A stretch of DNA of 64,000 nucleotides from Guillardia theta CCMP2712. Lineage: Eukaryota; Protista; Cryptophyta. Where the stretch lies: the NCBI RefSeq assembly GCF_000315625.1, contig NW_005434643.1:128212-192211 (forward strand), in the 5' to 3' direction. Positions 27,281-63,096 of this stretch are shown here, one piece after another; position 1 is the stretch's first letter, and each line of letters opens with the position of its first letter. The notes under the pieces are model-generated. The model saw only the letters and a program-made list of their open reading frames with translations, searched no databases and was not told the origin of the DNA. The position numbers and the translations under genes are program-made.

Positions 27281-27770
27281 CACCATATCTACATGAGATT
27301 GCAAAGAACGAAAGTTTTACTCAAGCGTGTCATCCCTGCAGCCCCACTAACTCCTGTCAAGTAAGCCCAGCACGAGACCGAGTCGGAGAAAGGTCGAGAC
27401 CCACGCTGATTCGCAGTGACCCCACCCTAACGGCTCCGAGACTCAGCCGCATGTAAGCCATTCTGAATTCATGGCTCGGAGCGGCCTCAATTCCAAAACC
27501 ATGCTAAAAATACTGCAGCTTCTAGTGTAAAGAAACACTCATACGCACCGTTCCGTCCTCGGAGTTCTCATTGCTGACATTGCTGACAGCCTCTTCCCTC
27601 CCTCCTCTCATCAAATAGCTTCCAGGCAGTAAACGCTCTCACCTCCTTCCCCCCTGCTCCCCTTGCCAGTCCCTGGGGCACTGCCGCAGCCACCCCCCCC
27701 CCCCCCCCTCCACCCTCCTCCGTGCCTCTTACGGCCTCACGTCTCCTCTTCCACAACGTCTTCTCGTATC

Positions 27771-28460
27771 ATGTGCAATCCCTTCTGCTTCTCACCGGCC
27801 CCTTCTGTGGACGATGCGGTCGCCGACCTGGCGATGTCTGACAACAGCCTCCTGGACTCGTTTCGAGCATACCTGCAGGACGAGGAGGCATGGGAGCTAT
27901 CCATCAAGAGCGCTGACAGCCTGGATCAGGTTGACTCCTCTCACACTAGCCCCAACCAAGACTCTCACCTCTTCTTTCCAACCTGCCCCGATCGCAGTTG
28001 GACGGAGGCGACCTGCATGGCTCCGGAGGTTGAGGGCCCTGTATCGTACGCACAGTCGCTGCTGGACTCAAGTGCAGCGTCTCCGTCTGTGTACAACAGT
28101 GCTTCTCAGTCAGGCTCCTCCCATTATGCTTCCTCCGAGTCCCAGGCGAGCCATCACCCAGCTGATGTGCTCGGCCAGCCGAGTCAATCACGGAACGAGC
28201 TGAAAACGTACTGCCATCGGCTTGAGAAAGCGATCTTCAACTCCAGCCAGTGGTCTCCCGACGAGGAGGCCAGGTTCCTCGAGGCCCTCGCCATGTTCTC
28301 CGACGCCGACCGCCGGGTGCGGCCGGATGGGAGGAGGTCTGTGGGTCTGGGTCTGGGGGTAGCGAGGAAGATCTCGGAGTATATAGGGACGCGGTCGGAG
28401 GGGCAAGTGCGGTCACACGCGCAGAAGCACTTCCTGCGGCAGGAGAGAAAGAATCAGTGA
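27771..28460 (+). CDS. single-repeat MYB (SHAQKY-class, SHAQKHF) transcription factor
   Basis: QWSPDEEARFLEAL...IGTRSEGQVRSHAQKHF; intronless; ATG at 27771. Confidence 0.92.
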   Translation: MCNPFCFSPAPSVDDAVADLAMSDNSLLDSFRAYLQDEEAWELSIKSADSLDQVDSSHTSPNQDSHLFFPTCPDRSWTEATCMAPEVEGPVSYAQSLLDSSAASPSVYNSASQSGSSHYASSESQASHHPADVLGQPSQSRNELKTYCHRLEKAIFNSSQWSPDEEARFLEALAMFSDADRRVRPDGRRSVGLGLGVARKISEYIGTRSEGQVRSHAQKHFLRQERKNQ

Positions 28461-28789: not shown

Positions 28790-29494
28790 TCACATCCTAG
28801 CTGAACTGCGATTCTTTCTCTCCTGCCGCAGGAAGTGCTTCTGCGCGTGTGACCGCACTTGCCCCTCCGACCGCGTCCCTATATACTCCGAGATCTTCCT
28901 CGCTACCCCCAGACCCAGACCCACAGACCTCCTCCCATCCGGCCGCACCCGGCGGTCGGCGTCGGAGAACATGGCGAGGGCCTCGAGGAACCTGGCCTCC
29001 TCGTCGGGAGACCACTGGCTGGAGTTGAAGATCGCTTTCTCAAGCCGATGGCAGTACGTTTTCAGCTCGTTCCGTGACTGACTCGGCTGGCCGAGCACAT
29101 CAGCTGGGTGATGGCTCGCCTGGGACTCGGAGGAAGCATAATGGGAGGAGCCTGACTGAGAAGCACTGTTGTACACAGACGGAGACGCTGCACTTGAGTC
29201 CAGCAGCGACTGTGCGTACGATACAGGGCCCTCAACCTCCGGAGCCATGCAGGTCGCCTCCGTCCAACTGCGATCGGGGCAGGTTGGAAAGAAGAGGTGA
29301 GAGTCTTGGTTGGGGCTAGTGTGAGAGGAGTCAACCTGATCCAGGCTGTCAGCGCTCTTGATGGATAGCTCCCATGCCTCCTCGTCCTGCAGGTATGCTC
29401 GAAACGAGTCCAGGAGGCTGTTGTCAGACATCGCCAGGTCGGCGACCGCATCGTCCACAGAAGGGGCCGGTGAGAAGCAGAAGGGATTACACAT
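28790..29494 (-). CDS. single-repeat MYB transcription factor, inverted copy
   Basis: Protein is identical to 27771-28460 except the last few residues (KNRSSARM vs KNQ). Confidence 0.92.
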   Translation of the reverse strand: MCNPFCFSPAPSVDDAVADLAMSDNSLLDSFRAYLQDEEAWELSIKSADSLDQVDSSHTSPNQDSHLFFPTCPDRSWTEATCMAPEVEGPVSYAQSLLDSSAASPSVYNSASQSGSSHYASSESQASHHPADVLGQPSQSRNELKTYCHRLEKAIFNSSQWSPDEEARFLEALAMFSDADRRVRPDGRRSVGLGLGVARKISEYIGTRSEGQVRSHAQKHFLRQERKNRSSARM

Positions 29495-29824
29495 GATACG
29501 AGAAGACGTTGTGGAAGAGGAGACGTGAGGCCGTAAGAGGCACGGAGGAGGGTGGAGGGGGGGGGGGGGGGTTGGCTGCGGCAGTGCGCCAGGGACTGGC
29601 AAGGGGAGCAGGGGGGAAGGAGGTGAGAGCGTTTACTGCCTGGAAGCTATTTGATGAGAGGAGGGAGGGAAGAGGCTGTCAGCAATGTCAGCAATGAGAA
29701 CTCCGAGGACGGAACGGTGCGTATGAGTGTTTCTTTACACTAGAAGCTGCAGTATTTTTAGCATGGTTTTGGAATTGAGGCCGCTCCGAGCCATGAATTC
29801 AGAATGGCTTACATACGGCTGAGG

Positions 29825-31459: not shown

Positions 31460-32310
31460 TATCCTGTACATGTTGCTGAATGAATTCATGAATTTACTTC
31501 TTACTGCCTGTAGTCACAGGATACTGCTGTAGTATTGATAACATTACATTGATCAACGTGGCCAATTAGTGGAGTCTGACAAACGCACCCTAAATTTGTC
31601 GGTGTTAGCCAAATGCGAAGCATACCAACAGGGCGTTCACGCGGTGTGGAACATGCTCGTCCGACCTCCTTCTCGTGTACCTTGGCCTCTCCATCTGACT
31701 GACAACAGGATGTCAACTCACATCCTTCCAGAATAGACTCCTACCAGCATGCACGCCGCGCCAAGAGCGTACCCCTCTTTATTATTGGTTCGTGTCGCTC
31801 GTTGAACATCACTGAAACAGCAATATTTTGATGATGAGTGCTTCCCTGTTGTGTGCTCAATGATGACAATGGATCTGAGATTCTATGTGACATCATTTAC
31901 TTGAACACATGGTTACATACAGCACCTTTTCGCAGTAACATACATAGGTTAGAGAACTAGCAGAGGAAAAGCGGAAATTCCAACGGGCAAACGTCGCTGC
32001 ATTCTGAGAATCAGTGTGTCAATTGCTCTTTGGAAAAGGTGCATTGGAGCTGCAAATCCTGAATGGAAGATCCAGACATCGCGGGCATTCGCTTCAAGTG
32101 AGGAAGTTCGAGGAAGTTCATGCAATAAAAGACTTCATTTTTTACCGTTTCATGTTGTTGATGTTCTCCATGACAGCATCAGGCATACTACATGAGAGAA
32201 CCATGCAATAAACGTGATGCTGGAATCTCATACAAGTGCAGCATGACCTCTGCCTGCCCCAGGACTAGGATGAAGTGCTGAGGGGGGCTCGATCCGGTCG
32301 CCATGATGTG

Positions 32311-35300
32311 ATGAAGCGCTGGCTATGGCTGCTGTTGCTCCTCTGCTCTCAGCATGCTCACTCGACGGCGCACGAGGAGGGAGAGGAGGCATGGAACTGT
32401 CTGTTCGTCAACCTAGTGTCTCAGACCAATGTCTACTCCGTCGACAGAGCCATCTCTGTCCATGTGGACATGCTTGAAGTCGGGGATGAGGCGGCGGTCG
32501 ACATCCTCAGTGCAGCCTGGGCGGTTGTGAGGTCGGAGGAGGAGACAAGTGATGCTGGAGACGCATACTTGTCGTCTCCCAGCGATCCTGTCCCTGTCGG
32601 TCATGGAAGTTTCTTGTTTCATTTCCTACCCGACGAGCTAGTCTCTGTGTTGGAGGTCGACAGAGAGTGGGGATGGCGAAGGCTGACGATCGAGAGGAGG
32701 TGGGAAGGAGGAGAGCTGAGATGTCAAGACGACGTGGTCGTGCGACTTCACAGTCACGGAGAGACAGCGGCAACATACACCTTCGAGTCACCTTCCCCGC
32801 TGCACACGCCACGGATTGTACATTTCATTCACCTGCAACTGGAACCTCGACCCCGCAACACCGCCCGGTGCGACGAGCTGCTCTCGCTCTCGGTTCGATC
32901 GACTGTCAATCACATCCAACCAGAGCGAATCTACCTGCACACCAACGACATGGACTTGTTGCGAGGATGTGTGGACATCCAGCACCACGTCACTGTCGTG
33001 AAGGCAGCGATCCCAAGGCGAGTGTTTGGAAACCGCGTCGACTGGTACCAACACCAGGCAGACATCATCAGACTCCATGCTCTTCGCAAGTGGGGGGGAG
33101 TGTACCTTGACACGGACGTGCTCGTCCTGCGGGACCTCGGGTTCTTGCTGTCCTCCAACATGTTCGTGGTAGGGGAGCAGTCAGGAGGAGGGATCTGTAA
33201 CGGGCTCATCGTCAGCCCCCGGCTGCATCCTTTCCTGCTGAGGTGGATCGCACAGTACATCTCCTTCGAGGAGGGGACGATGGGGCTGCACGCCTCGTAC
33301 CTCCCGATGATGATGGCGCGGCAAGCTCTGTCTCCCGCCGTCATGGTGATCTCCCCAGCCCATATGCACTGGCCCTCTTACCACCCACACGCTATCACCA
33401 CAGTGTGGCTCGGGAACTGGTTCTGTGCCCAGGAAAACCTGGTCTTACATATCTGGGGCTCTCGGTCGAGCCATGTGAGGAGGAGCGTCTTGGCCGGGCG
33501 GGGAGACGGAGGGAACGAGACGAGAAGGTCAGTGGACGGTGCGATGAAGACTGCTCTTGCTCCATCCTCTCAGCTGGAGGAATGCGATCATCTCATGCAT
33601 CCTCTGAGCCCGCAGCCCGGCTCAGACGAGGTACTGGCGTTCTGGCCTCTCACGGGAGGAGGGAGGTTTCTCCGAGAAGCATCGAGTGAGAAGCTCGAGG
33701 GAAGGGTTTACTCGCTTGAGGAGGAGGAGGAAGGAAAGGAGGAAGACAAGTCTCTGTTCTCGCGAGGTACATCCGGTGACAACTCGTTGGGGCTAGCGCT
33801 GGACAAGTCAAGGTTCGCCTTCCTTCCGTTCGCCGGCATCTTCAACACGAACCAGGCAAGTGCGATTTGCCGTTGCTGCTGTTGCTGCTACTGCTGCTTC
33901 TGCTGCTGCTTCTGCTGCTGCTGCTTTTGTGATCACTTCCTATCCAGCTCACCATCACGTGGAGCTGCAAGATCGATTGTCTATCGCGAGGCTCGTCCTG
34001 TGAGGAGCAGGTCGTCTGGTCGATGCACACGCTCAAGGATCGCAAACTCTACATGATGATCTCCTCCGATGGGAGCGGGCGGGTGGTGGCTGAACTGTTC
34101 CTCACCTCCGAAAGATTCTCCCACATCCTCGCTCAGGCGTTTCTCCCCGCTTCCCACCATGGCTGGCTGAGATTCACCGTCTCCCTCTCAGACAGCGAAC
34201 CCTGCAGGTTCCGCATCGAGAACACTACACATCACCTGCAGGCAGATGCCTCGGCCGGACATGCTATGTGCTCCTACAGCTCGCCGATCGCAGGCGTCTT
34301 CCTGTTCCACTGCGACAACGACGACGAGGGCTTGCTGTCCTCGTCGAACTGCTCTCACGTCTACAGCACCCTAGCAGAGGCAGTCACGATCTGCAACCGT
34401 CGGCCATCGTGCCATGGGGTCACCCTTGTCAAGGGGAAGGGGTTCGAGTTGAGGTCTAGCAGCAGCAGGGGGGTCTCAACTTCCGAGATCTCCTGGGTCA
34501 AGGAGTCCTGCCCTCCCCACCTCGCTGTCACCGACCCCAGCAGGTGCAGCAGCTTCTTCATGGTCGAGGATCAGCTCCTGTGCATGAGGAACGGCTCCTA
34601 CCAGCCCCTCCGTTGGACCTCGGGGTGCCGGCGGCGGAAGCTGGTGATTCCGAACAAGGTGTCGAGCGCTAAGGAGATGAACTATGCCGAGCACGGCGAG
34701 CTGCTGCTGAACATGCAGGGGTGCAGCCACGACGGGTGGATCTTCTCCAAGGATGCGGCCAACGGCATCTGGCTGGGATCGTTGGACGGAAGGGGAGGAA
34801 GGTCGTTGGAGGGTGTTATCCGAGATTTTACGATCATGAACAAGTTCTGGGAAGGAGAGGAGAGGCTGCAGCCGCATCGTCTGCAGGAGAAGCGAGCAGA
34901 GAGGGTCCGGCAGTTGTCGAGGACCATGAACCTCTGCATCAGCGAAGCTCTGTCTTGCTCTGAGGGGACGAGGAGGATGCTCCAGCGTGCTGATGGTGAC
35001 AGAGTCACAGACGAGGATAAGGATGCCTTTCCTTGCAGCGAGGCATGCGCGCAGTCGCTGTCCTCCAACGCTCAGCTGATGTGGTCTGTCTTGCAGCTCA
35101 ACTTCTGTCGCGAGCAGTGGAAGGGAGATGTCAAGCGCTGGGCGTTCGGGCAAGTGAGAGAGGTTCTCAGCGGTCTCACAAGTTGGTGCAAGATGATGGC
35201 AAGGAGAGAGTTTTCCATCTTTCATCTTGCCACAGTCAAGCAGAAACAAGCAGAGCACAGAGGTCTTCATCGCAAGGCCTTTCCACGTGCCAGAGAAGGT

Positions 35301-52321: not shown

Positions 52322-52891
52322 ATGAGCTGCCACGCCTGCGATCAGATCAGCCTAGAGGACGCCATCGCCAGCCTCTACCCTCAGGACCTCTACTACTCTC
52401 CTGTCACTTCCGACCCTCTCGACCTCATGCACTCGTGGATCGCTGAGAACCCCATTCCGCATGCCCACTGCAACTTTTCGGACGCGAACGAGGCCGATGT
52501 CGCGAGGAGCAGGCGCTGGGCGGAGGCAACGCTGGAAAGGTCCAACTCCAACACCTCCCTGAGCAGCGCTGCAACTGCAAGCTTGTCCGATGCGGAGTGG
52601 GGAGAAGCGGGAAATCCTGAGCCGGAGAAGAAAGTCAAGGCGAAGCGAAGCTACAAGCCCAAGACCAGCCGGACGCAGTGGACGAAGGAGGAGCACGCGA
52701 GCTTCGTGGCAGCGGTAGAGGCACACTGTCCCATGGAGACAAGGAGCGGGGCGAATGGGAAGGTGTTCGTGGGACTTGGAGCAGGAGTGGCCGAGCTTAT
52801 AGCAACAGCGGTGCCGACGAGGACTGTAGCGCAGATCAGGTCGCATGCGCAGAAATACTTCCTGAGGGAGAGCAAGAAGGGCGATTGGTAA
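52322..52891 (+). CDS. SHAQKYF-class MYB transcription factor, tandem copy 3
   Basis: Near-identical to copies 1 and 2. Confidence 0.93.
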   Translation: MSCHACDQISLEDAIASLYPQDLYYSPVTSDPLDLMHSWIAENPIPHAHCNFSDANEADVARSRRWAEATLERSNSNTSLSSAATASLSDAEWGEAGNPEPEKKVKAKRSYKPKTSRTQWTKEEHASFVAAVEAHCPMETRSGANGKVFVGLGAGVAELIATAVPTRTVAQIRSHAQKYFLRESKKGDW

Positions 52892-54200: not shown

Positions 54201-54612
54201 CCGGCTCATCTGAGAGAGGCGTAGACGGCACAAACCTGCCTCAGGACTTATTTCACAGGGCAGAAAATGGACTGGATAGCTCATACTTTGCTGCCTTCTT
54301 TAAATCTGTCCCTTCGCGCCATGAGACACGCTCCTGTTCCCTCTGTTGCCATCAGAATCAACGAAAAGACTCCTTTTCAGACAAAGGGGTTCTTTGTTCC
54401 TCAAGGCAACAGGGGCAGCATATCTCACCTTGAATCACGCGCTCCCTCTCCCCTATCCTCAGCATCCCTCTTCTCTCCTGCCATCCTCTCTCGCCCTCTA
54501 CTCCTGTTCTCATCCCTCTCCTCTCCCCCCTCTCCTCTGTCACCCTCTACTCCTGTTCTCTCCTCTCTCCCTCTCCTCTCTCCTTTCCTTCGTCAACCGC
54601 CTCTCCTTCAAC

Positions 54613-57600
54613 ATGAACCTACGTTTCACTCTCCGAGCACGCAATGTGCGAAGCTCATTGTTTTTAACCTGCCTCATCCTGGAGTTCTCTGCCATACAGG
54701 CTCAGAATGTTGCAGAGCTATCTGCATGCTCCTCCGCATGCACGGCCAAACCCCTCTCCGGGTTTGTAAAGTTCGCGAGTGCAAATGATTCAATTGCAGC
54801 TCACCTGGTGGAAATCAATGGGACAGAGACGAACGTGTTCAGGTTTGTAAGCGTTGCTGTTCCAAACTTGATTAGACTGGAAACAAGCTCGTCGAACTCA
54901 TCTTCCATTGGGCTTCCTACTGACGGAGAGATCTGGGACGCCCTCTGCTCGGTACAGCAACTGGGAGGAAGGGTTGCAAGGCTGTACGTGTTCTCTTTCT
55001 GCAACGACTCCTCCCGCTGCCATTTTTATTGGAACGTCACTACGTCAAGGCTTGATCACAGCGAAGCGTTTTTTGAGCGCCTGGACGCAGCACTAGAGAT
55101 TGCAAACTCGCTTGGGGTCAGGCTACAGATCCCTTTCATGAACATGGCGCAGCTAGAGTCCTGGGGAGGGGCGGCAACCCTGTGCTCCTGGGCTAAAGTT
55201 GATCCTCGGAACTTTTTCGATGATGCGACAGTGCAAGAGATGTACCGGTATGTGGTGCAGACAGTCGTGACGAGGAAGAATACGAGGACCGGCATCCTCT
55301 ACCGAGACGACCCGGCGATCTTCGGATGGGAGCTCGGTAACCTTGTTTTGCACTGCGGATCCTTTCCCTTACTTACCGTTGTGGGCACAGGCAACGAGCT
55401 CTTCACTCCGACGTGTAGCGACCTGGTCAACTGTGTCAGGAACAAGCAGCTCTCAGACTTTCCCGGTGTTCCGGTCAGTTGGACCAACGAGACCTCCAGG
55501 TGGCTGCGGTCCATGGACGCCGACCATCTCATCATCGATGGCGGGTTTCCCAAGGATTCGGCGATTCTCGACCTTCCGGACTTGAACGTCATCGGCGCAA
55601 CGTACTACTACAGCACAACAGACCAGCTGCAGTCCGATCTTGACTTCAACGGGGGCAAGAAAGCGTTCCTTATCAAGGAGTTCGGCACGTCGGGGAACTC
55701 TGAATTAACTACCGTGCAAGGTGTCTTCGGCCTTATCCAGGGCAACAGCGACGTGAGCGGAGCTTTCTATTGGAGTTTGCGCAGCCATCATCGGTCTGGG
55801 GGGTTCTACTGGCACTATGAGAGCCTCGTCAATGCCTCTTCAGGTCAAACGGTCTACCCGCGCTCCCTCAATTGGCCAGGTTTCTCTAACTCGACGCCGT
55901 CGTACGAGAAAGAGATCTTCTCTCAGATCCTCACGACCGGGGAGCTCATAGGAGTGCCTCAGCCTGATGATTCGTATGTCCCGTGCCCTCCTACCATCGT
56001 CCAAGTCTCAAACTCGTTCCCTCCCTGCTACACCTTCATCGGCAGCACAGGGGCAAAGAGATACGAGATATGGCTGAGTCCCAACAATGGCAAGGAAGAC
56101 GACTGGTTTCGCATTCAAGCAGATGCAAGCGATGATGTCGTCGAGAAGATTTCTGCAATGAATTTTCTCGATGACAATACGGTTCGAACGATGATGTCGT
56201 GGACGGGCAACGAATGGCTCGTATGCTTCCAAGCGTGCAGTTACTACGACATCTGCTCCTCCTGCTCTGCTTCTCTGGTGATTGTCTTCAATGCAACCGG
56301 ATCTGCGGATCCATTTTGCTCTGCTACTGCGGCACAAGTCGCTCCCAGGGTTGAGGATAGCAGCCGATTGGGGTTGTGGATCCTGCAGCAAGACAGCACG
56401 CAACAGTTCAAAGATGCTTACCTCGTGTTCCTGACTGTGTCGTGCTGCTTCACTGGCATTGTTGTCATCATCTACTCGAAAGTTGTATATCAGGTCATTG
56501 CACGTATTCTTGGATTTCTCGTTCGTTCGCAAAAAGAAGAAGATGAAGCTCAGCCGTATCACCTTGCGAGGTTGTCGGACAACGAGAGGAACGCGAAGCT
56601 TGCTTCAGCGTCTGTCTTGTTTCAAATTGCTTGCGTCGTGTTGATACTGTTGTTCCAACGAAGAACAAGTCTAGAGCAGCATCGAGTCACAGAAGTCATG
56701 ATAGACGCGGGTCGAAGCAGCTTCTCTCTTCTCTTCTTGATCTGGGGGTTTGAGATCACGAGGATTCATTCTGCCTTTGGAAACGCAGAAAAGATGACAG
56801 CTCTCAAGTTTCTCGGGATGAAGTTTGCGTCTTCGTTTCCTTCTCTTCTTCTTGCATGCATCGTCAGCTTCATCATGCTCGGCTCCGAGCTCTGGGGCGA
56901 GTTCTTTCTCCTCCCCCTGGGGCTCAGCGCATGGATGCCTTCACTCTGGTTCAACGACGTCAACGGCCTCGCCTGGCTCCAGGGGGCACTGGGGTTCAAC
57001 GCACTCATCTTCCTCCCCGTCTTCGACTTTCTGCAGACGAGGGTGACGAGCTTGCGGTCTAAGTTGACGATGATGTTAGTCATGTGGGTCCTGTCAGCCT
57101 GGCAGGCCATCGACTTCATCGGCCTCCGCGTCTTCCTCCTCGATCGCCTCATCGCTGCCGTCTTCCTTCGCGCCTTCTCTCCCGCCTTCTTCTTCGGTGT
57201 GGCACTCGCAACCGTCGACCCCAGCAGGGTGTCATGGACGTTGAGCACTTGCCTCGGTCTGCTCTCGCTCGCTGGCTGCTTGGTTGTGCTTGCGTTCTAT
57301 CAAACAGCTTTTGGCAATTTCTCGTACATGATCGCCTGGTTGAACACGGGTCTTCTGCTTCCTCTGCAGGCACTCGTCTTCCTGTTGTTCTACAAGGCAT
57401 CTTCTGCCGTCCTGCCCAACTCTTTGCATCATGTAGCTGCAATCTTACATCCTCATCTATCGGGGGTGCTCATCAGTGCGTTGCTCATGGACTCTATGAT
57501 GTGGACGATTGTGACCAGAGTGAGTCACCAAGTGAACGATGTAGTTTGGCTGTGCTACCCCCTCTCGCTCCTCACCATCGCAGCTGTCAACTACTTCTTG

Positions 57601-60600
57601 TCAAGAAATTTTGCCGACAACCTCCGTCGCCTCTTCTACCAAATGTCGACAACGAAAGCTCAGGAGGAGGAGGAGGAGATTACAACAGAAAGCAAACTCT
57701 TCTACTACTACCTCAGCTTCTTCATTATCGTAGCCACCTTCTGTCTAGCTCAGCTGGTGAACCCGTGGGTCAATCTCGTTCAATTCAGCGGAGCAGCTGC
57801 AGACGCTCTGTGCGGCATTTCCTGGATTCTCCTTCTCCCTGCTCCTGCTCTTCTCCAGGGTCTTGCCGGCCTCCTCTTCTACCCTGCTGTCATCCCTGAC
57901 CATGCGCCTCCCATTGAAGATCAGCTGGAGAAGGAGAAGAACGAGAGGCCGGCCGTTCTCAGCTCTCGCGCTCCCTTTATCCTCTTCTTCCGCATTGTCA
58001 CCCGAGGCAACAACCCGAAGCTCGTCCTCGCAAACTGCAAAACGGCCATCGCCGTACTCGAGCGCAGTGGGCTGGCGGCTAGCCGGTGGAAGGTGGAGGT
58101 GGTCACGGACAACAAGATCGACCTCTCGGAAGCACCCTCGGTTGACCAGCTCGTCGTTCCTAGTGACTACAACCCTCCTGGTGGCTGCAAGTACAAGGCT
58201 AGAGCCCTCAACTATGCAGCCGCTGCCAGCAGAGCTCGAGCTCACGACTGGATAGTCCACCTGGACGAGGAGACGAGGTTCGAGGAAGAGACAGTGCGGC
58301 ATATCTTTGCGCACTGCATGCAGCAGGAGATCTTGTTGGCATCCGGAAAGACTTCGTTCCCGAGCATTGGGCAGGGGGTCATCTACTACAACAAGGGGGG
58401 TATAGAGAACTACCTGACTGCTCTTGCTGATACCATCCGAGTCGCTGACGACTACGCCAAGTTCAGACTGCAGTACAAGCTCTTCCGCCTTCCCCTCATC
58501 GGCATGCACGGCTCCTTCGTGGTCTGCTGCAACAAGCTGGAGCAGCAGGTGGGATGGGACTGGGGGATGGTAGGAAGCATCACTGAGGACACTTACTTTG
58601 CGATGAAGCTGGCGGGGCAAGGCGTCAGGTTTGACTGGGTGGGAGGAAAGATGTTCGAGCAAAGCCCTTTCTCCGTCAACGACTTTGGGAAGCAGCGAGC
58701 GAGATGGTTCTCAGGCCTCTGGCTCTGCGTCCTCACAGACTCGCTGCCTCTCTGGCAACGAGCTTACCTCGGCAGCCACCTTGTGTCCTGGACCGTCTGC
58801 CCTCTCCTGACCTTCGTGACTTGGCTGAACTTGCTCACCATCTTCCCGAGGTCCTCGACGTTCGTCTACCTCATGTCCTTCATCTTCTCCATCCCCTTCT
58901 GGAGCTACAGCCTTGGCTTCGTTCTTGGCTTCGATCCCAGCCAGTTCAAGCACGGAAGGCTCGAGTGGGTACTCATGTTTCTTGCACACATCAGCCTGAT
59001 CCCTGTCTACACTCTGATGGAGAGCTACGGGGTCATGCGAGGGCTCTGCGACAGGAAGACCTACACTGGATTCCACATCGTCAAGAAGGAGAAGACGGAC
59101 GAGGAGGAGAAGGCGAGCAAGGGTGACAGGGGCGAGTCGATGATCATGCTGACGAGGCTGGACGGGAAGGAGAGCTGCAGCAGCTCGGACTCTTCGTCAC
59201 ATGACAACGTCAGCATTTCTCCACCCTGCTCTGCCGGTGATGCTCGAGGGGAGGAGGACAGGAAGCTGTGGGAGACGAGGCTGACGCTTGACTTCGAAAA
59301 CTTGTTCTTTGTCAACCCCTCAGTCGACGGACCCGGGCAGCTCTTCTCGAAAGAGCAGCAGCTGGGCTGCAGCTGGACTGAGTTCCTCTCCTTCTGCCAG
59401 GATTGCAAGGTCAACCAACAAGTCGCCTTGTCCATCGCCGTCGGAACAACCCTCCGAAGGTATAGCAACTTTGCCAACACCATCTGCCTCGGGATCAGGG
59501 AGAAGAGCAGGTTTGTTCCTTTGACGAGCAACTTTGACGAGCTCGAATCTCTGTCGGGTCTCATGGCAAGCATGCAGCAGCTCTACGATGAGCACGCGAG
59601 CAAGCTCGGGGAGTGGGCGGACGTGGAGGTGCTGAGAGGGTTTGCAAGGAGAGAACAAGTGTTTCATGCGCTCCTGTCAACTGAAGAAAACAAGAGGGAG
59701 GCTGACCTGCTGTACCTTTCCAAGCTTCTCGGCGGGAAGGAGCGATGTGCAGATCTCTCCATCAGTCTGAGGGTGGAGCAGGAGAAAGTTGTTCTTCTCG
59801 GAGCTGCTGACGATGCCGTGATGTGGCCTGAGCTGATGGGTAATATGCTCTGCCACGTCAGCGTCTTCCTCTCCCATGCTGTGCGATGCCCGAGGGATAT
59901 GGCGATCGGTGACATGGAGTATCTCGATCCTGATGAGAGAAAGAGAATCCTGAGCGACTTTGCTTGGTCTGCTCGAGAGCGCCAGCAGCGACTCGGGATG
60001 GAGACGATGCAGGACCTGCTGGAAGACGCCTTCGTCCAGGCCAGCCGCAGCAGGACAGCCATCGAGTGCCCGAGAGAGGGAGTGAAGATGTCGTACGAGC
60101 AGCTCGACCGTAGCTGCCGGCGGTTGTCCCAGATGCTGTTGAGGTCAGGGGTGAAGCAAGGAGACGTCATAGCGATCGCAGCGGAGAAGACCGCAGAAAC
60201 CATCGCCTCGCTCCTCTCTGTCGTCCGATGTGGCGCTGCTTACATGCCAGTCGACATCTCGTACCCTCCCGACCGCCTTCGTTTCATGCTCTCCGACACC
60301 AACTGCCGTCTCCTCCTCTGCTCTCCCGAGCAGCAGGAGCAGTGGAGTGCTGTCTTTGCCGATGAGAGCAGGAAGAGCAAGCAGACTCTCGTCTCCTCTC
60401 GCGTCGAGGTGCTCGTCGTCAAGCCCGAGGACTTGAGCCACGCGGAGGTCAACATGGAGGAGGCTAGACGGGTACACAAGGCTCGTCCGGAGGATCCAGC
60501 TGCCATCATCTTCACCTCAGGGTCAACTGGAGTGCCCAAGGGTGTCGAGATCTCTCAGGGAGCTCTTCTTGCTCAGAACCTCGCCATGAACCAGTCTCGC

Positions 60601-63096
60601 CCTCTCTCTTCCTCCGACCGCATCGTCCAGCAGACCATGTTGACCTTCGACGTGGCGGGCAACGAGATCTGGTCGAGCTTCTTCTTCCGCTCTACCCTCG
60701 TCATCGTCGACGACGCCACTCGCTTGCTCGGCTTCGAGAACTTCCTTCTCCGCAACGCCATCTCAGTGCTCTTCATCACCCCTAGCCACCTCGCGCTCCT
60801 CTCTCCTCCTGCCTGCGGCAAGTCTCTCAAGACCCTCGTGCTCGCCGGCGAGGCTCTTCCTCCCTCCCTCAGCGATCGCTGGGCCTCGCAGGGAAGAGCT
60901 CTGCTCAACGAGTACGGCCCGACCGAGACCAACGTCGTCACCTCCTGCAAGGACTACCCCTGCAGCAAGTTCCCTTCCTCCGCGACCTCCATCGGACGTC
61001 CCCTGCCCGGCGTCGTCGCCCTCGTCCTCGATCGCCACATGCGCTTATCGCCTGTCGGGGTGCCGGGAGAGCTCTGCATCGGAGGAGATCAGCTTGCTTC
61101 CTCCTACTGGAACAGGCCAGACCTCACCTCCTCCAAGTTCGCCGACTGCAAGCTCCTGGGAGAGGGCGGGGCAGGGCAGCAGAGCAGGAGAGTCTACAGG
61201 ACAGGCGACCTCTGCCGTTGGCTGCCGGATGGAAAGATCGAGTACCTGGGGAGGATGGACAATCAGATCAAGATCCGCGGGATGAGAGTGGAGATTGGAG
61301 AGATCGAGTCAAAGATTTCGGAGGAGGAGGACGTCAGCCAGACTGCCGTCGTGCTCCTGCAAGACAAGGGCGTCAGCACTCTGGCCGCTGCTGTGGTGCT
61401 GCGGGGGAAGACGTGGGAGGAGGAGAAGGTGGTCGAGCGGCTATCCGCCTCCCTCCCCCAGCACATGATCCCTTCCTTGTTCGTGTGCCTCGAGGCTCTG
61501 CCGACCACAACCAGCGGGAAGATTGATCGCAAGAAGCTGGGAGAAATGCTTCGAGAGCACAGAGCTCACAACAAGACACTCCAGCCTCCTCCTCCTCCCT
61601 CCTCCCTTCCCCTCCCAGCTGACCTCACCAACTTGCAAGCCTTCCTCCAGTCGGCTGACGTCAAGCTCCTCCAGCGCCTCGGCATCGACTCGCTAGGCAT
61701 TGCCAGGAGATATCGCTCGCTGCAGCAGGACGAGGAGACGGCAAGAGCAGAGCTGAAGGTCTCCAATGGCGTTCGAGCCATCTGCATGTACGGGGTCATC
61801 ATCGACCACCTCGCCTCCTGCATGCCGTCCTCCTACTGCGCTGCCGTCGCTCGCGTCCTCATCCCTCGATCGCGTGCGGGGCTGCCAGTCAACGAGAGCA
61901 TGCTGACCTTGGAGGTGTTCCTGCGCTCCATCGGCAACTACAAGACAGTCGCTGGTTTTGCAACCATCTCAGGCTACATGGACGCGGGGACAGACTCATC
62001 CTTGCGCTTCTCCTTCACTGACATCGTCATCCTCCTCTCCTACCTCGAGATGGCCTGGGTCTTCGACCCCATCGTCACCGCCTTCTACGGAGCAGCAGGC
62101 AACGACACCTCCTCTCCCTGGTGGCTCGCGCAGCAGCGCTGGTACCTCCTTGCCATGCTTCTCTGCCGCTTCGCCGTCGTCGTCTTCCGCGGCCTCCACG
62201 TCCCCCCCCTCCTGCAGCTGCTCGTCGTGAGCATGGCGCTCTTTATCTCCCCGCCCAACATTGTCTGCGTCTCTCAGGCTTGCGCCAGTGACGTCATCCC
62301 CGCCTGGATGAGCTGGGAAAGTGCCCCTCAGCCCGTGGAAGGCTTTTTCCACTTCTTCATCCGCGGCATTGAGCCTCAGGCCTCCTCCTACGCCTATGCA
62401 GCCTTCCGGTACGTGATCACGCGCAAGTACCTCCTCACCGTCTTCTTCTACATCCTCAGCTTCAACTACGGGCGATGGTTCGTTCGCGTCATCACCGAGA
62501 GGATGAAAGAGGTCGCAGGGAGCATGAGCAGGAGGATAAGAAGCTTCCGCGTGCTGATGCGAGTGATCCTCGGCATCCTCTCGTCGTCGCTCCTCGTGCT
62601 GATTAGCTTGACCGAAAGCGACAGATTCAACGCGCAGGAGGACAACTGGGTGCAGGAGGACGGGACCTTCTACGACCAGCCTCACCTTACTCGCCTGGGC
62701 CTCCTCGTCGTCGTCCTCTTCTTCTCCGTCCTCTGCGAGTGCGTTCTCACCTGGTCTCTTCCTCTTGAGCTACAGACCGCGGGCTCGACGACTCTGGGAT
62801 CGTTCGCAGCTCACAGCTACGTCAACCTTGCCTTCTCCTCCCTCTTCCTGCAGAACATGCGAGGAAACATGATCGGCTACATCTTGCTGGTCCTGACGAT
62901 CCCGATTATGACCATGTTGGTGTTTGGCCCTCTTCTGCAGTACTTCATGGTATGGCACATCAAGATGATCGCAAGTGCCCTGCAACGTCTGTGTACAAGT
63001 GTCTTCCCTTCTTGGAGGAAGGACGACACGCAACATTTGGAGAGAACGGAGAGCGCTGGATCGCTCGTCATGGTCCAGCAAGTGTCTTGCAACTGA
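54613..63096 (+). CDS. giant multidomain membrane enzyme (~2809 aa after removing intron 55337-55390): signal peptide - GH5 mannanase-like - FN3/Ig-like - degenerate AT3 - egghead-type GT2 - partial C - NRPS A - minimal T - AT3
   Basis: GH5: GGRVARLY, YRDDPAIFGWELG|NE, IKEFG, GAFYWSLR..GGFYWH. GT2: RIVTRG, EVVTD, KARALNYA, WIVHLDEET, HGSF, SITED, EQSPF..QRARW. A domain: FTSGSTGVPKG, FDV, NEYGPTE, GELCIGG, YRTGD, GRMDNQIKIRG, SGKIDR. T: LGIDSL. AT3: NGVRAICMYGVIIDH, FATISGY, WYL. Confidence 0.93.
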   Translation: MNLRFTLRARNVRSSLFLTCLILEFSAIQAQNVAELSACSSACTAKPLSGFVKFASANDSIAAHLVEINGTETNVFRFVSVAVPNLIRLETSSSNSSSIGLPTDGEIWDALCSVQQLGGRVARLYVFSFCNDSSRCHFYWNVTTSRLDHSEAFFERLDAALEIANSLGVRLQIPFMNMAQLESWGGAATLCSWAKVDPRNFFDDATVQEMYRYVVQTVVTRKNTRTGILYRDDPAIFGWELGNLVLHCGSFPLLTVVGTGNELFTPTCSDLVNCVRNKQLSDFPGVPVSWTNETSRWLRSMDADHLIIDGGFPKDSAILDLPDLNVIGATYYYSTTDQLQSDLDFNGGKKAFLIKEFGTSGNSELTTVQGVFGLIQGNSDVSGAFYWSLRSHHRSGGFYWHYESLVNASSGQTVYPRSLNWPGFSNSTPSYEKEIFSQILTTGELIGVPQPDDSYVPCPPTIVQVSNSFPPCYTFIGSTGAKRYEIWLSPNNGKEDDWFRIQADASDDVVEKISAMNFLDDNTVRTMMSWTGNEWLVCFQACSYYDICSSCSASLVIVFNATGSADPFCSATAAQVAPRVEDSSRLGLWILQQDSTQQFKDAYLVFLTVSCCFTGIVVIIYSKVVYQVIARILGFLVRSQKEEDEAQPYHLARLSDNERNAKLASASVLFQIACVVLILLFQRRTSLEQHRVTEVMIDAGRSSFSLLFLIWGFEITRIHSAFGNAEKMTALKFLGMKFASSFPSLLLACIVSFIMLGSELWGEFFLLPLGLSAWMPSLWFNDVNGLAWLQGALGFNALIFLPVFDFLQTRVTSLRSKLTMMLVMWVLSAWQAIDFIGLRVFLLDRLIAAVFLRAFSPAFFFGVALATVDPSRVSWTLSTCLGLLSLAGCLVVLAFYQTAFGNFSYMIAWLNTGLLLPLQALVFLLFYKASSAVLPNSLHHVAAILHPHLSGVLISALLMDSMMWTIVTRVSHQVNDVVWLCYPLSLLTIAAVNYFLSRNFADNLRRLFYQMSTTKAQEEEEEITTESKLFYYYLSFFIIVATFCLAQLVNPWVNLVQFSGAAADALCGISWILLLPAPALLQGLAGLLFYPAVIPDHAPPIEDQLEKEKNERPAVLSSRAPFILFFRIVTRGNNPKLVLANCKTAIAVLERSGLAASRWKVEVVTDNKIDLSEAPSVDQLVVPSDYNPPGGCKYKARALNYAAAASRARAHDWIVHLDEETRFEEETVRHIFAHCMQQEILLASGKTSFPSIGQGVIYYNKGGIENYLTALADTIRVADDYAKFRLQYKLFRLPLIGMHGSFVVCCNKLEQQVGWDWGMVGSITEDTYFAMKLAGQGVRFDWVGGKMFEQSPFSVNDFGKQRARWFSGLWLCVLTDSLPLWQRAYLGSHLVSWTVCPLLTFVTWLNLLTIFPRSSTFVYLMSFIFSIPFWSYSLGFVLGFDPSQFKHGRLEWVLMFLAHISLIPVYTLMESYGVMRGLCDRKTYTGFHIVKKEKTDEEEKASKGDRGESMIMLTRLDGKESCSSSDSSSHDNVSISPPCSAGDARGEEDRKLWETRLTLDFENLFFVNPSVDGPGQLFSKEQQLGCSWTEFLSFCQDCKVNQQVALSIAVGTTLRRYSNFANTICLGIREKSRFVPLTSNFDELESLSGLMASMQQLYDEHASKLGEWADVEVLRGFARREQVFHALLSTEENKREADLLYLSKLLGGKERCADLSISLRVEQEKVVLLGAADDAVMWPELMGNMLCHVSVFLSHAVRCPRDMAIGDMEYLDPDERKRILSDFAWSARERQQRLGMETMQDLLEDAFVQASRSRTAIECPREGVKMSYEQLDRSCRRLSQMLLRSGVKQGDVIAIAAEKTAETIASLLSVVRCGAAYMPVDISYPPDRLRFMLSDTNCRLLLCSPEQQEQWSAVFADESRKSKQTLVSSRVEVLVVKPEDLSHAEVNMEEARRVHKARPEDPAAIIFTSGSTGVPKGVEISQGALLAQNLAMNQSRPLSSSDRIVQQTMLTFDVAGNEIWSSFFFRSTLVIVDDATRLLGFENFLLRNAISVLFITPSHLALLSPPACGKSLKTLVLAGEALPPSLSDRWASQGRALLNEYGPTETNVVTSCKDYPCSKFPSSATSIGRPLPGVVALVLDRHMRLSPVGVPGELCIGGDQLASSYWNRPDLTSSKFADCKLLGEGGAGQQSRRVYRTGDLCRWLPDGKIEYLGRMDNQIKIRGMRVEIGEIESKISEEEDVSQTAVVLLQDKGVSTLAAAVVLRGKTWEEEKVVERLSASLPQHMIPSLFVCLEALPTTTSGKIDRKKLGEMLREHRAHNKTLQPPPPPSSLPLPADLTNLQAFLQSADVKLLQRLGIDSLGIARRYRSLQQDEETARAELKVSNGVRAICMYGVIIDHLASCMPSSYCAAVARVLIPRSRAGLPVNESMLTLEVFLRSIGNYKTVAGFATISGYMDAGTDSSLRFSFTDIVILLSYLEMAWVFDPIVTAFYGAAGNDTSSPWWLAQQRWYLLAMLLCRFAVVVFRGLHVPPLLQLLVVSMALFISPPNIVCVSQACASDVIPAWMSWESAPQPVEGFFHFFIRGIEPQASSYAYAAFRYVITRKYLLTVFFYILSFNYGRWFVRVITERMKEVAGSMSRRIRSFRVLMRVILGILSSSLLVLISLTESDRFNAQEDNWVQEDGTFYDQPHLTRLGLLVVVLFFSVLCECVLTWSLPLELQTAGSTTLGSFAAHSYVNLAFSSLFLQNMRGNMIGYILLVLTIPIMTMLVFGPLLQYFMVWHIKMIASALQRLCTSVFPSWRKDDTQHLERTESAGSLVMVQQVSCN

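What the first reader, a model, noticed from the sequence alone, without database searches (positions are those of the whole stretch)
54613..63096. One-polypeptide glycan synthase-NRPS hybrid: GH5 + AT3 + egghead GT2 + C*-A-T + AT3
Seen: one open frame carries, in order, a signal peptide (54613-54705), GH5 hydrolase (~54760-55950), beta-sandwich-like segment, TM helix, multi-TM AT3-like domain (~56580-57630), egghead/BRE-3-like GT2 (~57690-59090), half condensation domain (~59270-59970), complete adenylation domain (~59995-61550), GIDSL carrier motif (Ser codon 61690-61692) and a second multi-TM AT3 (~61750-63000). There is no TE or reductase domain. Known: Egh/BRE-3 are GDP-Man beta-1,4-mannosyltransferases; AT3/OafA proteins move acyl groups from cytosolic thioesters onto extracytoplasmic glycans; A domain + carrier + membrane acyltransferase is the logic of Dlt D-alanylation; GH-GT-TM fusions exist (fungal Ags1). 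Inference: a self-contained assembly line that builds a beta-mannosyl glycan or glycolipid, activates an amino acid, transfers it through AT3 onto the sugar, and trims or transglycosylates it luminally. I know of no characterised enzyme with this architecture.
Basis: partly seen in the sequence, partly recalled or inferred. Interest (0 to 1): 0.96.

Follow-up and report, generated by a model that had tools for sequence, protein, structure and literature searches.

The report
Mannan synthase fused to amino-acid acylation module
A cryptophyte alga has one giant membrane-protein gene that joins a sugar-chain-cutting enzyme, a sugar-chain-building enzyme, an antibiotic-synthetase-type amino-acid activator and two membrane acyl-transfer domains; relatives occur in several other protist groups, none has been studied, and it may be a new way to make and esterify a surface glycan.

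Summary
Window 54613-63096 (+) is one 2827-codon frame, single-copy in an 87-Mb nuclear genome.

- **GH5:** it has a signal peptide and a GH5 domain of endo-beta-1,4-mannanase type (profile against PDB, E 1e-38; both catalytic Glu present).
- **Middle part:** a Cys-rich domain and a membrane anchor follow, then an AT3/HGSNAT-fold domain.
- **GT2:** this domain is egghead/BRE-3-like (35-38% identity to named egh/bre-3, E 1e-57 to 1e-61).
- **NRPS part:** only the C-terminal half of a condensation domain is present. A full adenylation domain follows (TIGR01733 above cut-off).
- **Carrier motif:** an invariant LG(I/V)DSLG motif comes next.
- **Second AT3:** a second AT3/HGSNAT-fold domain keeps the Arg...His signature.

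- The frame hides one in-frame 54-nt GT-AG intron (55337-55390) that splits the GH5 acid/base motif.
- The "T domain" is a roughly 45-residue stub, not a Pfam carrier domain.
- Neither membrane domain reaches Pfam AT3; the support is structural.

The same architecture occurs in other cryptophytes, a haptophyte, a dinoflagellate and a diplonemid. In the last two it lies on a single transcript. The A-stub-AT3 unit is a rare, self-standing protist module.

Function is inferred only: a beta-mannoside or mannan synthase whose product is aminoacylated across the membrane. I found no paper on it. RNA evidence in this alga is thin.

The parts
54613..63096 (+). Whole coding region, 2827 codons as read through (2809 after removal of the 54-nt intron), stop at 63094-63096
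   Evidence: single copy in the genome
54613..54705 (+). Signal-peptide-like N-terminus (MNLRFTLRARNVRSSLFLTCLILEFSAIQAQ)
   Evidence: Read from the translation. Homolog P0014 aligns from residue 34 on. No signal-peptide predictor was available.
54706..55947 (+). GH5 domain, endo-beta-1,4-mannanase type. Acid/base Glu codon at 55396-55398 (motif WELGNE after splicing); nucleophile Glu codon at 55678-55680 (KEFG).
   Evidence: Profile A2 against PDB: 9m20 at E 1.4e-38, 1rh9 at 3.2e-34. PF26410 GH5_mannosidase is recorded on the relatives' products. Motifs seen.
55337..55390 (+). In-frame 54-nt intron candidate (GTAACC...GCACAG, pyrimidine-rich 3' part) inside the GH5 acid/base motif
   Evidence: It is the only insert of 8 or more residues absent from all homologs. 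The DNA was read. The closest relatives read an uninterrupted PAIFGWELGNELF. No RNA read covers it.
55948..56412 (+). Cys-rich extracytoplasmic domain of unknown fold (conserved PC.P, PPC..F.GS.GA..YE.W, C..AC and CS.CS)
   Evidence: Alignment A9. Fold not tested. One N-glycosylation sequon lies in this domain; the other eight of residues 1-600 lie in the GH5 part. Residues 1-600 hold 17 Cys.
56410..56517 (+). Single membrane anchor helix
   Evidence: Hydropathy peak of 2.44; helix 2-41 of model m2897d6efc90b
56578..57642 (+). First AT3/HGSNAT-fold (TmAT) membrane domain, about 10 helices. In this alga it lacks the Arg...His signature of helix 1.
57691..57885 (+). Two membrane helices that lead into the GT2 domain
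57910..59112 (+). Egghead/BRE-3-like GT2 domain (HLDEET, SITEDT and QRARW motifs) with its C-terminal membrane helices. The Pfam core is 58249-58884.
59266..59982 (+). C-terminal half of an NRPS condensation domain. The half that carries HHxxxDG is missing.
   Evidence: Profile A5 against PDB aligns only to C-domain residues about 190-460, E 1.5e-16. PF00668 model positions 187-453 are hit weakly in P0001 and P0003.
59983..61551 (+). NRPS-type adenylation domain with its C-terminal subdomain. Pocket code read as D V N F V A E V V K.
61615..61752 (+). Carrier-like stub with the invariant LG(I/V)DSLG motif. Ser2360 codon at 61690-61692.
61753..63012 (+). Second AT3/HGSNAT-fold (TmAT) domain. Arg2388 codon at 61774-61776 and His2399 codon at 61807-61809, spaced as in the AT3 signature. 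Two invariant Cys follow directly after the His.

Best explanation
This is a real nuclear gene, single-copy in this genome, with one small intron. Earlier notes of this scan name the organism as the cryptophyte Guillardia theta. The gene encodes a roughly 2800-residue multi-pass membrane protein that combines two units.

Unit 1 is a glycan unit. An egghead-type GT2 on the cytosolic face uses a nucleotide sugar, most likely GDP-mannose, to make a beta-1,4-mannoside or a short beta-mannan that ends up on the extracytoplasmic face. There the N-terminal GH5 mannanase-type domain can cut or transglycosylate it. The Cys-rich domain plus the first TmAT-fold domain form an HGSNAT-like holder or channel.

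Unit 2 is an acylation unit. The adenylation domain is braced by a catalytically dead half C domain. It activates an alpha-amino acid with ATP and probably loads it on a phosphopantetheine arm on Ser2360, which sits at the cytosolic mouth of the second TmAT-fold domain. That domain uses the conserved Arg2388 and His2399 to pass the aminoacyl group through the membrane onto a hydroxyl of the glycan. [quoted passage not shown]

Shown here: the domain identities, their order, the conservation of catalytic residues, and the presence of the architecture in several protist groups. Inferred: the donor sugar, the polymer length, the membrane topology, phosphopantetheinylation of the stub, the amino acid, and the acceptor.
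For: - **One frame:** 2916 open codons. The gene is single-copy on a 687-kb scaffold of an 87-Mb genome.
- **GH5:** the profile hits solved mannanases at E 1e-38, and both catalytic Glu are invariant.
- **GT2:** 35-38% identical over more than 92% of its length to proteins named beta-1,4-mannosyltransferase egh or bre-3. The DxD, ED and QxxRW motifs are invariant.
- **A domain:** above the curated TIGR01733 cut-off. Asp at the position that aligns with the FD motif of solved amino-acid A domains.
- **Half C domain:**
- **DSLG serine:** invariant in 32 homologs from very different lineages. It lies at the N-terminus of a helix in a model of pLDDT 74-82. The only near-matches in PDB are acyl carrier proteins at their attachment site.
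- **Second membrane domain:** HGSNAT is the best structural match at Z 13.5, well above background. The R...H motif aligns in register with a canonical AT3 of the same genome.
- **A linked to the membrane domain:** of 171 relatives of this membrane domain among 1.84 billion proteins, nearly all those long enough to judge have an A domain directly upstream.
- **Same gene order elsewhere:** three related metagenome contigs, a Biecheleria cincta transcript, a Namystynia karyoxenos transcript and a Prymnesium parvum gene.
- **Topology:** the helix count of 1 + 10 + 2 before the GT2 domain places GH5 outside and GT2 inside.
Against: - No activity of any domain has been measured.
- The carrier is a stub. 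It has no PF00550 hit, no room for helices 3-4, and the profile E-value is 0.14 at best. A phosphopantetheinyl transferase may not accept it.
- Neither membrane domain reaches Pfam AT3. hhalign against canonical AT3 is not significant, and Foldseek against PDB found nothing.
- The characterised egghead enzyme adds a single mannose to a glycolipid, so a polymer is not implied.
- Outside cryptophytes the A domain lacks Asp235, so the group transferred is not an amino acid in most of the family.
- RNA evidence in this alga is three short low-depth contigs in a run only guessed to be RNA, plus one read in a true RNA run.
- The genome's own 483-aa gene model (held without a source name, so its origin was not seen) covers only residues 1011-1493.
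Confidence: 0.5

Rival explanations
1. Glycolipid rather than polymer. The GT2 domain does what egghead does and adds one beta-1,4-mannose to a glucosyl-lipid. The A-stub-TmAT unit aminoacylates that glycolipid or another membrane lipid head group on the outer leaflet. The GH5 domain remodels the head group or acts on an unrelated exogenous mannan.
For: The closest named relatives of the GT2 domain are the single-sugar glycolipid transferases egh and bre-3. There are only about 2 + 4 membrane helices around the GT2 domain, fewer than processive synthases usually have (my own knowledge).
Against: The GH5 profile matches endo-mannanases, which need several mannose units. No endoglycoceramidase appears among the 22 PDB hits. 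The strict co-occurrence of GH5 and GT2 across phyla fits a synthase with its own trimming enzyme.
Confidence: 0.25
2. No carrier chemistry. The DSLG serine is structural or is itself O-acylated. The second membrane domain takes the acyl group directly from the acyl-adenylate or from a free CoA thioester made by the A domain acting as a CoA ligase, or it works as an exporter for the activated acid.
For: The stub fails the PF00550 test and is too short for a four-helix carrier. Known TmAT enzymes such as HGSNAT use free acetyl-CoA (PMC11357348). The A domain also scores well against acyl-CoA ligase models.
Against: The Ser and the Gly two residues after it are invariant, and the Asp and Leu beside the Ser nearly so, in all 32 homologs. 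The motif reads like an ACP attachment site. The A domain scores above the NRPS-specific TIGR01733 cut-off and well below the cut-offs of the CoA-ligase models.
Confidence: 0.15
3. One or both TmAT-fold domains are not acyltransferases. Instead they form the conduit that moves the nascent glycan or a lipid-linked intermediate across the membrane, and the A domain has a regulatory or priming role.
For: The first membrane domain of this alga lacks the Arg/His signature. The two membrane domains are not detectably similar to each other. A shared fold shows no function (note).
Against: The second domain keeps Arg and His at AT3 spacing, with invariant Cys just outside. It is almost never found without an A domain, which argues for handing over an activated acyl group.
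Confidence: 0.07
4. Artefact. The long frame is a misassembly, a pseudogene or several genes run together, and no such polypeptide is made in this alga.
For: The genome's own 483-aa gene model covers only residues 1011-1493. RNA support is minimal.
Against: A frame of 2900 codons without a stop cannot persist without selection. Logan contigs of four 2011 runs are collinear across 54400-60399, although they may be the genome's own data. The same gene order is found in three related contigs and in single transcripts of two other phyla. Catalytic residues are intact throughout.
Confidence: 0.03

Closest known systems
Egghead (Drosophila) / BRE-3 (C. elegans) beta-1,4-mannosyltransferases, GT2, Pfam PF13632
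   Same: The GT2 domain is 35-38% identical over more than 92% of its length to proteins so named. It has the same Pfam family and conserved DxD, ED and QxxRW motifs.
   Different: Egh and BRE-3 are stand-alone proteins of about 460 aa. Here the domain is embedded in a 2800-aa protein between a TmAT-fold domain and an NRPS module. The acceptor and processivity are unknown.
Dlt D-alanylation system of Gram-positive bacteria (DltA adenylation enzyme, DltC carrier, DltB MBOAT, DltD)
   Same: The logic matches: an adenylation enzyme, a Ser-linked carrier arm, and a polytopic membrane acyltransferase that esterifies an extracytoplasmic glycopolymer. The A domain scores 203 bits against the DltA model NF003417, below its cut-off of 476.
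   Different: The membrane enzyme here has the AT3/HGSNAT (TmAT) fold, not MBOAT. All parts are fused in one chain. The carrier is a stub. There is no DltD-like partner. The host is a eukaryote. This is an analogy, not membership.
HGSNAT (human lysosomal heparan-alpha-glucosaminide N-acetyltransferase) and the TmAT superfamily (AT3 and YeiB families)
   Same: HGSNAT is the best structural match of both membrane domains (Z 13.5 and 11.6). It has a catalytic His at the luminal mouth and a cytosolic donor (PMC11357348). The layout of a luminal domain, one helix and a 10-helix core resembles residues 446-1010 here.
   Different: HGSNAT takes free acetyl-CoA. Here a fused A domain should supply the acyl group. 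Sequence similarity is not detectable.
Bacterial AT3 O-acyltransferases (OafA, OatA, Oac, NodX; Pfam PF01757)
   Same: The language-model nearest neighbours of both domains are PF01757 clusters. The best shape match of domain 1 is a PF01757 cluster. Domain 2 has the R...H motif of helix 1 and a GF motif in helix 2.
   Different: There is no PF01757 hit at E 10 or below, apart from one relative at 0.44. There is no SGNH partner domain. The donor is presumably not acetyl-CoA.
Glycan synthases paired or fused with a hydrolase of the same polymer (fungal Ags1; BcsA with BcsZ; plant CesA with KORRIGAN), from my own knowledge
   Same: An extracytoplasmic glycoside hydrolase or transglycosylase domain is combined with a cytosolic synthase domain and membrane helices.
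   Different: The families differ (GH5 and an egghead-type GT2), and none of those systems carries an acyl-activating module.
GH5 endo-beta-1,4-mannanases (e.g. tomato LeMAN4a, PDB 1rh9; 9m20)
   Same: The profile matches at E 1e-34 to 1e-38 over about 270 positions, with both catalytic Glu in place.
   Different: The domain is N-terminally fused to a membrane protein. PF00150 does not detect the domain in this sequence.

Membership tests
GH5 (clan GH-A) mannanase | Sequence match to family members of solved structure | tested here: met
   Profile A2 against PDB: 16 GH5 mannanase or mannosidase sequences between E 1.4e-38 and 3.7e-13. PF00150 is weak in homologs (8.4e-5 and 4.5e-3) and absent in the query.
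GH5 (clan GH-A) mannanase | Acid/base Glu in an N-E motif and a nucleophile Glu | tested here: met
   WELGNE (after intron removal) and KEFG; both Glu are invariant in alignment A2.
GT2, egghead/BRE-3 group (PF13632) | Pfam PF13632 above the gathering score | tested here: met
   82.3 bits against a cut-off of 27
GT2, egghead/BRE-3 group (PF13632) | Full-length similarity to proteins named egh or bre-3 | tested here: met
   35-38% identity, 92-97% coverage, E 1e-57 to 1e-61. EGH clusters are among the top three by language-model features.
GT2, egghead/BRE-3 group (PF13632) | GDP-mannose-dependent beta-1,4-mannosyl transfer | not testable with these tools
   Needs an enzyme assay.
NRPS adenylation domain | TIGR01733 above the curated cut-off, and AMP-binding plus AMP-binding_C | tested here: met
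   369.9 bits against 317.4. PF00501 at 4e-72 and PF13193 at 1.4e-7.
NRPS adenylation domain | Asp235 and Lys517 (GrsA numbering) that hold the alpha-amino and carboxyl groups | tested here: met
   FDVAGNE aligns with the FD motif of LgrA A domains. The Lys lies in SGKIDR. Positions relative to GrsA were placed from memory of the motif layout. Relatives outside cryptophytes have G, A or S at position 235.
NRPS condensation domain | Complete two-lobed domain with the HHxxxDG catalytic motif | tested here: not met
   Only the C-terminal lobe aligns, to chain residues about 190-460 of solved C domains. Residues 1493-1552 upstream are low-complexity.
Carrier (T/PCP/ACP) domain, PF00550 | Pfam PP-binding match | tested here: not met
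   No hit at E 10 or below for residues 2297-2396 or for any of 8 homologs.
Carrier (T/PCP/ACP) domain, PF00550 | Conserved Ser in a (L)GxDS(L) motif at the start of a helix | tested here: met
   Ser and the Gly two residues after it are invariant, and the Asp and Leu beside the Ser nearly so, in 32 sequences. The Ser lies at the N-terminus of helix 45-56 of the model. The best PDB near-hit is the ACP NodF at its LGIDSLG site, E 0.14.
Carrier (T/PCP/ACP) domain, PF00550 | Four-helix bundle of about 75-80 residues | tested here: not met
   Only three short helices (model residues 21-56) come before the first membrane helix. In some relatives only 35-68 residues separate the A domain from the membrane domain.
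Carrier (T/PCP/ACP) domain, PF00550 | Phosphopantetheinylation of the Ser | not testable with these tools
   Needs mass spectrometry or an Sfp labelling assay.
AT3 (PF01757) / TmAT superfamily, second membrane domain | Pfam PF01757 match | tested here: not met
   None in the query; one homolog at E 0.44. A six-frame genome search with PF01757 finds three other loci but not this one.
AT3 (PF01757) / TmAT superfamily, second membrane domain | TmAT fold | tested here: met
   Model pLDDT 82. HGSNAT at Z 13.5 (276 residues aligned, rmsd 4.6) and Z 11.5, GWT1 at 7.9, next hit 5.1. Atlas shape match to a DUF418/YeiB cluster at TM 0.61.
AT3 (PF01757) / TmAT superfamily, second membrane domain | Arg and His in the first helix | tested here: met
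   His2399 is nearly invariant. Arg2388 is invariant in the eight closest homologs (A3) but falls below 90% in the 32-sequence set. They align in register with the R...H of a canonical AT3 of the same genome, although the alignment itself is not significant.
AT3 (PF01757) / TmAT superfamily, first membrane domain | TmAT fold | tested here: met
   Model pLDDT is only 64. HGSNAT at Z 11.6 and 9.9, GWT1 at 8.1, next hit 6.2. Atlas shape match to a PF01757 cluster at TM 0.67, 319 residues aligned.
AT3 (PF01757) / TmAT superfamily, first membrane domain | Arg and His in the first helix | tested here: not met
   This alga reads SASVLFQIACVVLILLFQ. Haptophyte, dinoflagellate and diplonemid relatives keep LD.LR..A.LH.

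The most novel reading that the evidence does not exclude
Protists have a previously unrecognised way to esterify extracytoplasmic glycans. An NRPS-type adenylation domain loads an acyl or aminoacyl group on a minimal carrier arm built into the cytosolic mouth of an AT3/HGSNAT-fold acyltransferase, which passes it through the membrane. This would be a eukaryotic, single-chain counterpart of bacterial Dlt chemistry on a different membrane fold. In cryptophytes it is fused to its own beta-mannan or mannoside synthase and trimming hydrolase and has switched to an amino-acid substrate.
Probability: 0.35. Interest if true: 0.9.

Novelty: new variant of a known kind. Interest (0 to 1): 0.78.

Why it matters
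Every domain belongs to a known superfamily. Six full-text literature searches found no description of the combination, and no homolog carried a functional name beyond generic labels.

If the mechanism holds, three things follow:
- It would be the first case of a TmAT/AT3-fold acyltransferase fed by a fused adenylation domain rather than by a free CoA thioester.
- It would be the first Dlt-like glycan aminoacylation in a eukaryote.
- It would be a self-contained unit that makes, decorates and trims a glycan in one polypeptide.

It would also point to an unknown surface polymer or glycolipid in ecologically important algae (cryptophytes, haptophytes, dinoflagellates) and in diplonemids. The A-stub-TmAT unit of about 1100 residues is small enough to test biochemically. 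The change of pocket residue 235 between lineages offers a natural experiment on substrate choice.

Tried and rejected
- **Pfam, whole protein and seven pieces:** found only GT2 and the A domain.
- **Pfam, every member of the two membrane-domain alignments:** nothing useful.
- **Profile-to-PDB sequence searches, both membrane domains:** nothing.
- **Foldseek against PDB, second membrane domain:** no match at E 0.001 or below. Only the exhaustive aligner found HGSNAT.
- **hhalign of the two membrane domains against each other:** no similarity, so they are not a recent duplication.
- **hhalign of each membrane domain against two canonical AT3 genes of the same genome:** not significant, E 0.25 and 0.053.
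- **Single-sequence GT2 search against PDB:** no glycosyltransferase hit.
- **RNA evidence:** inconclusive. No run on record as RNA holds the stretch. Runs X2 and X3 look like low-coverage DNA that is collinear with the window, so they say nothing about splicing. Run X1 gave three exact contigs of 160-175 nt inside the frame, and run X6 gave one read.
- **The 54-nt intron:** could not be confirmed by reads.
- **Substrate:** I considered assigning the A-domain substrate from its ten-residue code. From memory the nearest codes are proline-type (6 of 10) and tyrosine-type (5 of 10). I do not commit to either.
- **Contamination or recent bacterial transfer:** rejected. The gene lies on a 687-kb scaffold, has a spliceosomal-type intron, and all close homologs come from eukaryotic or metagenome sources.
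- **No complex prediction was run:** no binding claim between separate proteins is made.


Full report
**1. The observation**

The + strand is open from 54346 to 63096, 2916 codons. The first ATG is at 54613 and gives 2827 residues, starting with a signal-peptide-like sequence.

The rest of the 64-kb window has only a handful of frames over 250 codons, as expected of an intron-rich eukaryote. The window is part of contig C31 of an 87.1-Mb assembly of 669 contigs. Earlier notes of this scan name the organism as the cryptophyte Guillardia theta; I did not verify the name myself. Both the GT2 part and the last membrane domain occur only once in the genome.

**2. Domain by domain**

Pfam and NCBIfam recognise only three things directly:
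- GT2 PF13632 at residues 1213-1424, E 5e-23.
- AMP-binding plus AMP-binding_C.
- The NRPS-specific TIGR01733, 369.9 bits against a cut-off of 317.4.

The other assignments needed homologs.

*GH5.* A five-sequence profile of residues 32-445 hits solved GH5 endo-beta-1,4-mannanases. These include 9m20 at E 1.4e-38 and tomato 1rh9 at 3.2e-34. The acid/base and nucleophile glutamates (WELGNE, KEFG) are invariant. On contigs of close relatives the corresponding products carry PF26410 GH5_mannosidase.

*Half C domain.* A nine-sequence profile of residues 1540-1790 hits solved condensation domains, but only their C-terminal half, E 1.5e-16. The lobe with HHxxxDG is absent.

*GT2.* This domain is 35-38% identical over more than 92% of its length to insect and nematode proteins named beta-1,4-mannosyltransferase egh or bre-3, E 1e-57 to 1e-61. 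The DxD, ED and QxxRW motifs are invariant in the family.

**3. The two membrane domains**

Neither gives a Pfam or PDB sequence hit. They are not detectably similar to each other.

Language-model features place both next to PF01757 (AT3) clusters, with scores of 0.95 and 0.96 and all 100 neighbours in one family set.

I modelled both with AlphaFold on family alignments:
- **Second domain plus stub.** pLDDT 81.9, pTM 0.85. Foldseek found nothing. The exhaustive aligner ranks HGSNAT first and second (8jkv Z 13.5, 276 residues; 8tu9 Z 11.5) and the acyltransferase GWT1 third (Z 7.9), with the next hit at 5.1. The best ESM-Atlas shape match is a DUF418/YeiB cluster, TM 0.61.
- **First domain.** The model is poorer, pLDDT 64.1. 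It gives the same three top hits (Z 11.6, 9.9, 8.1; next 6.2) and a PF01757 cluster as best shape match (TM 0.67, 319 residues).

The HGSNAT paper places the AT3 and YeiB/HGSNAT families in one TmAT superfamily whose members cannot be aligned by sequence. It puts the catalytic His at the luminal mouth of a pore that holds acetyl-CoA (PMC11357348).

I therefore call both domains TmAT (AT3/HGSNAT) fold, not members of PF01757.

The second domain keeps Arg2388 and His2399. These align in register with the R...H of a canonical AT3 of the same genome, though that alignment is not significant. Two invariant cysteines follow directly after the His. They suggest that this end of the helix faces an oxidising compartment.

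The first domain of this alga has lost that signature, while haptophyte, dinoflagellate and diplonemid relatives keep LD.LR..A.LH.

**4. The carrier**

PF00550 does not match. The model shows only three short helices (model residues 21-56) before the first membrane helix, with Ser2360 at the start of the third.

Ser2360 and the Gly two residues after it are invariant, and the flanking Asp and Leu nearly so, in 32 homologs that otherwise share about 20% identity. The only near-hits of a profile of this stretch in PDB are two acyl carrier proteins. NodF is the better one and aligns at its attachment site LGIDSLG, but at E 0.14.

This is a carrier-like stub. Whether it is phosphopantetheinylated is the weakest link of the mechanism.

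**5. A hidden intron**

Against ten homologs the query has exactly one private insert of 8 or more residues. It is 18 codons long and lies inside WELG-NE. The DNA is GTAACC...pyrimidine-rich...GCACAG, 54 nt, at 55337-55390. Removing it restores PAIFGWELGNELF, which the three closest relatives read without interruption.

The frame is therefore not strictly intron-free. As read through, the GH5 acid/base motif would be split. No RNA read covers the site.

**6. Is it one gene?**

The evidence for one gene is as follows:
- In close relatives on metagenome contigs (67-72% identical in the GT2 part), the same order of GH5, Cys-rich domain, first membrane domain and GT2-to-end is found. There it is broken into four or five frames by gaps that look like introns.
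- Full-length collinear proteins exist in several lineages:
  - Prymnesium parvum (KAL1508416.1, 2642 aa).
  - A Biecheleria cincta transcript (2846 aa).
  - A Namystynia karyoxenos transcript (2605 aa).
  - Unnamed assemblies of 2904 and 3225 aa.
- Two of these are single assembled mRNAs.
- In this alga the support is the unbroken frame itself and collinear Logan contigs, which may be the genome's own data.

Transcription evidence is weak. There are three exact contigs of 160-175 nt at depth 2-4.5 in a run only guessed to be RNA, and one read in a true RNA run of which only 6% was read.

The genome's own 483-aa gene model, held in the protein collection without a source name, equals residues 1011-1493 only.

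**7. The A-stub-TmAT module**

A profile of the stub plus second membrane domain finds only 171 proteins among 1.84 billion. My local domain scan shows that nearly all hits long enough to judge have an A domain directly upstream. Many are proteins of about 1100 residues made of just A plus the membrane domain, among them one from the dinoflagellate Ansanella granifera. The acylation unit is thus an evolutionary module of its own, and some lineages fuse it to the glycan unit.

The ten pocket positions read DVNFVAEVVK in all six cryptophyte-type sequences. Every other lineage has Gly, Ala or Ser in place of Asp235, for example GIWFVCLMTK and AVWMVVFCTK. I placed the positions relative to GrsA from memory of the motif layout. 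The FD alignment itself is confirmed against LgrA.

By established knowledge of A domains, Asp235 binds the alpha-amino group. This predicts an amino acid for the cryptophyte enzyme and a non-amino carboxylic acid for the others.

**8. Topology**

Hydropathy and the model helices give one anchor helix, about ten helices in the first TmAT domain and two more before the GT2 domain. That is an odd total after a cleaved signal peptide.

This places the GH5 and Cys-rich domains outside. Residues 1-600 hold nine N-glycosylation sequons and 17 cysteines. It places GT2 inside. About four helices after GT2 would return the chain to the cytosol for the C half, the A domain and the stub. No dedicated predictor was available, so this is inference.

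**9. Mechanism and rivals**

Best reading (confidence 0.5): a cytosolic egghead-type GT2 makes a beta-1,4-mannoside or short mannan that reaches the outer face. The GH5 domain trims or transglycosylates it. The A domain activates an amino acid, loads the arm on Ser2360, and the second TmAT domain passes the aminoacyl group across the membrane to the glycan.

Rivals:
- A glycolipid rather than a polymer (0.25).
- No carrier chemistry (0.15).
- Membrane domains acting as conduits (0.07).
- Artefact (0.03).

**10. Comparison and novelty**

It works like Dlt (adenylation, carrier, membrane acyltransferase) but on a different membrane fold. It works like HGSNAT or AT3 but with a built-in donor supply. 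It resembles synthase-hydrolase pairs such as Ags1, from my own knowledge.

Six literature searches found no description, and no homolog carries an informative name.

I rate it a new variant of known kinds, with a fair chance (0.35) that the acylation unit is a new mechanism.

**Neighbourhood**

Nothing nearby looks functionally linked. There is a GT32-like DXD frame at 32275-34056 and several Myb-like frames.

Noticed in passing
window 57643-59091: The genome's own protein for this locus is a 483-aa model (P0318; held without a source name, so its origin was not seen). It equals residues 1011-1493 of the long frame, that is, only the egghead-like part. It starts at an internal Met and ends where no stop codon exists. 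The fused architecture is therefore not visible in that model.
   Followed up: partly
homologs P0014, P0121, P0116, P0140, P0195 and about 30 others (alignment in /scratch): The A-domain pocket residue 235 is Asp only in the cryptophyte clade. All haptophyte, dinoflagellate, diplonemid and unassigned relatives have Gly, Ala or Ser. This predicts a switch from a non-amino acid to an amino acid substrate within one family.
   Followed up: partly
proteins P0126, P0133, P0145, P0182, P0187, P0189, P0195, P0222: There is a family of proteins of about 1100 residues that consist of just an A domain, the DSLG stub and the TmAT-fold domain. Most come from 3.5-kb metatranscriptome-like contigs and one from the dinoflagellate Ansanella granifera. 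They are uncharacterised and small enough for biochemistry.
   Followed up: partly
window 446-1010 in protein residues = 55948-57642: The layout of an outer Cys-rich domain, one membrane helix and a 10-helix TmAT core resembles the layout described for HGSNAT (a luminal beta-sandwich, TM1 and the core; PMC11357348). The fold of the Cys-rich domain was not tested.
   Followed up: no
window 27663-28460 (+), 28790-29602 (-), 52322-52891 (+), perhaps 13342-14139 (+): Several frames of about 190-270 codons each end in a Myb-like DNA-binding repeat (PF00249, E 1e-5 to 7e-7). Two of them face each other 330 nt apart. They may be copies of one repeated element or a small gene family.
   Followed up: no
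window 32275-34056 (+): A 593-codon frame with a glycosyltransferase DXD sugar-binding region (PF04488, E 4e-8) lies about 20 kb upstream. No link to the finding was shown.
   Followed up: no
window 57659-57679: A short GAG/GAA-rich stretch coding for the EEEEE run attracts pieces of many unrelated, highly expressed contigs in the read-laying. The apparent depth of 320-360 in run X1 there is not expression of this gene.
   Followed up: yes
Prymnesium parvum KAL1508417.1 (P0309): The same Prymnesium locus also has a 5268-aa 'partial' protein model in the same 90% cluster. UniRef names the 2642-aa form '1,3-beta-glucan synthase', a name that none of my domain tests supports.
   Followed up: no
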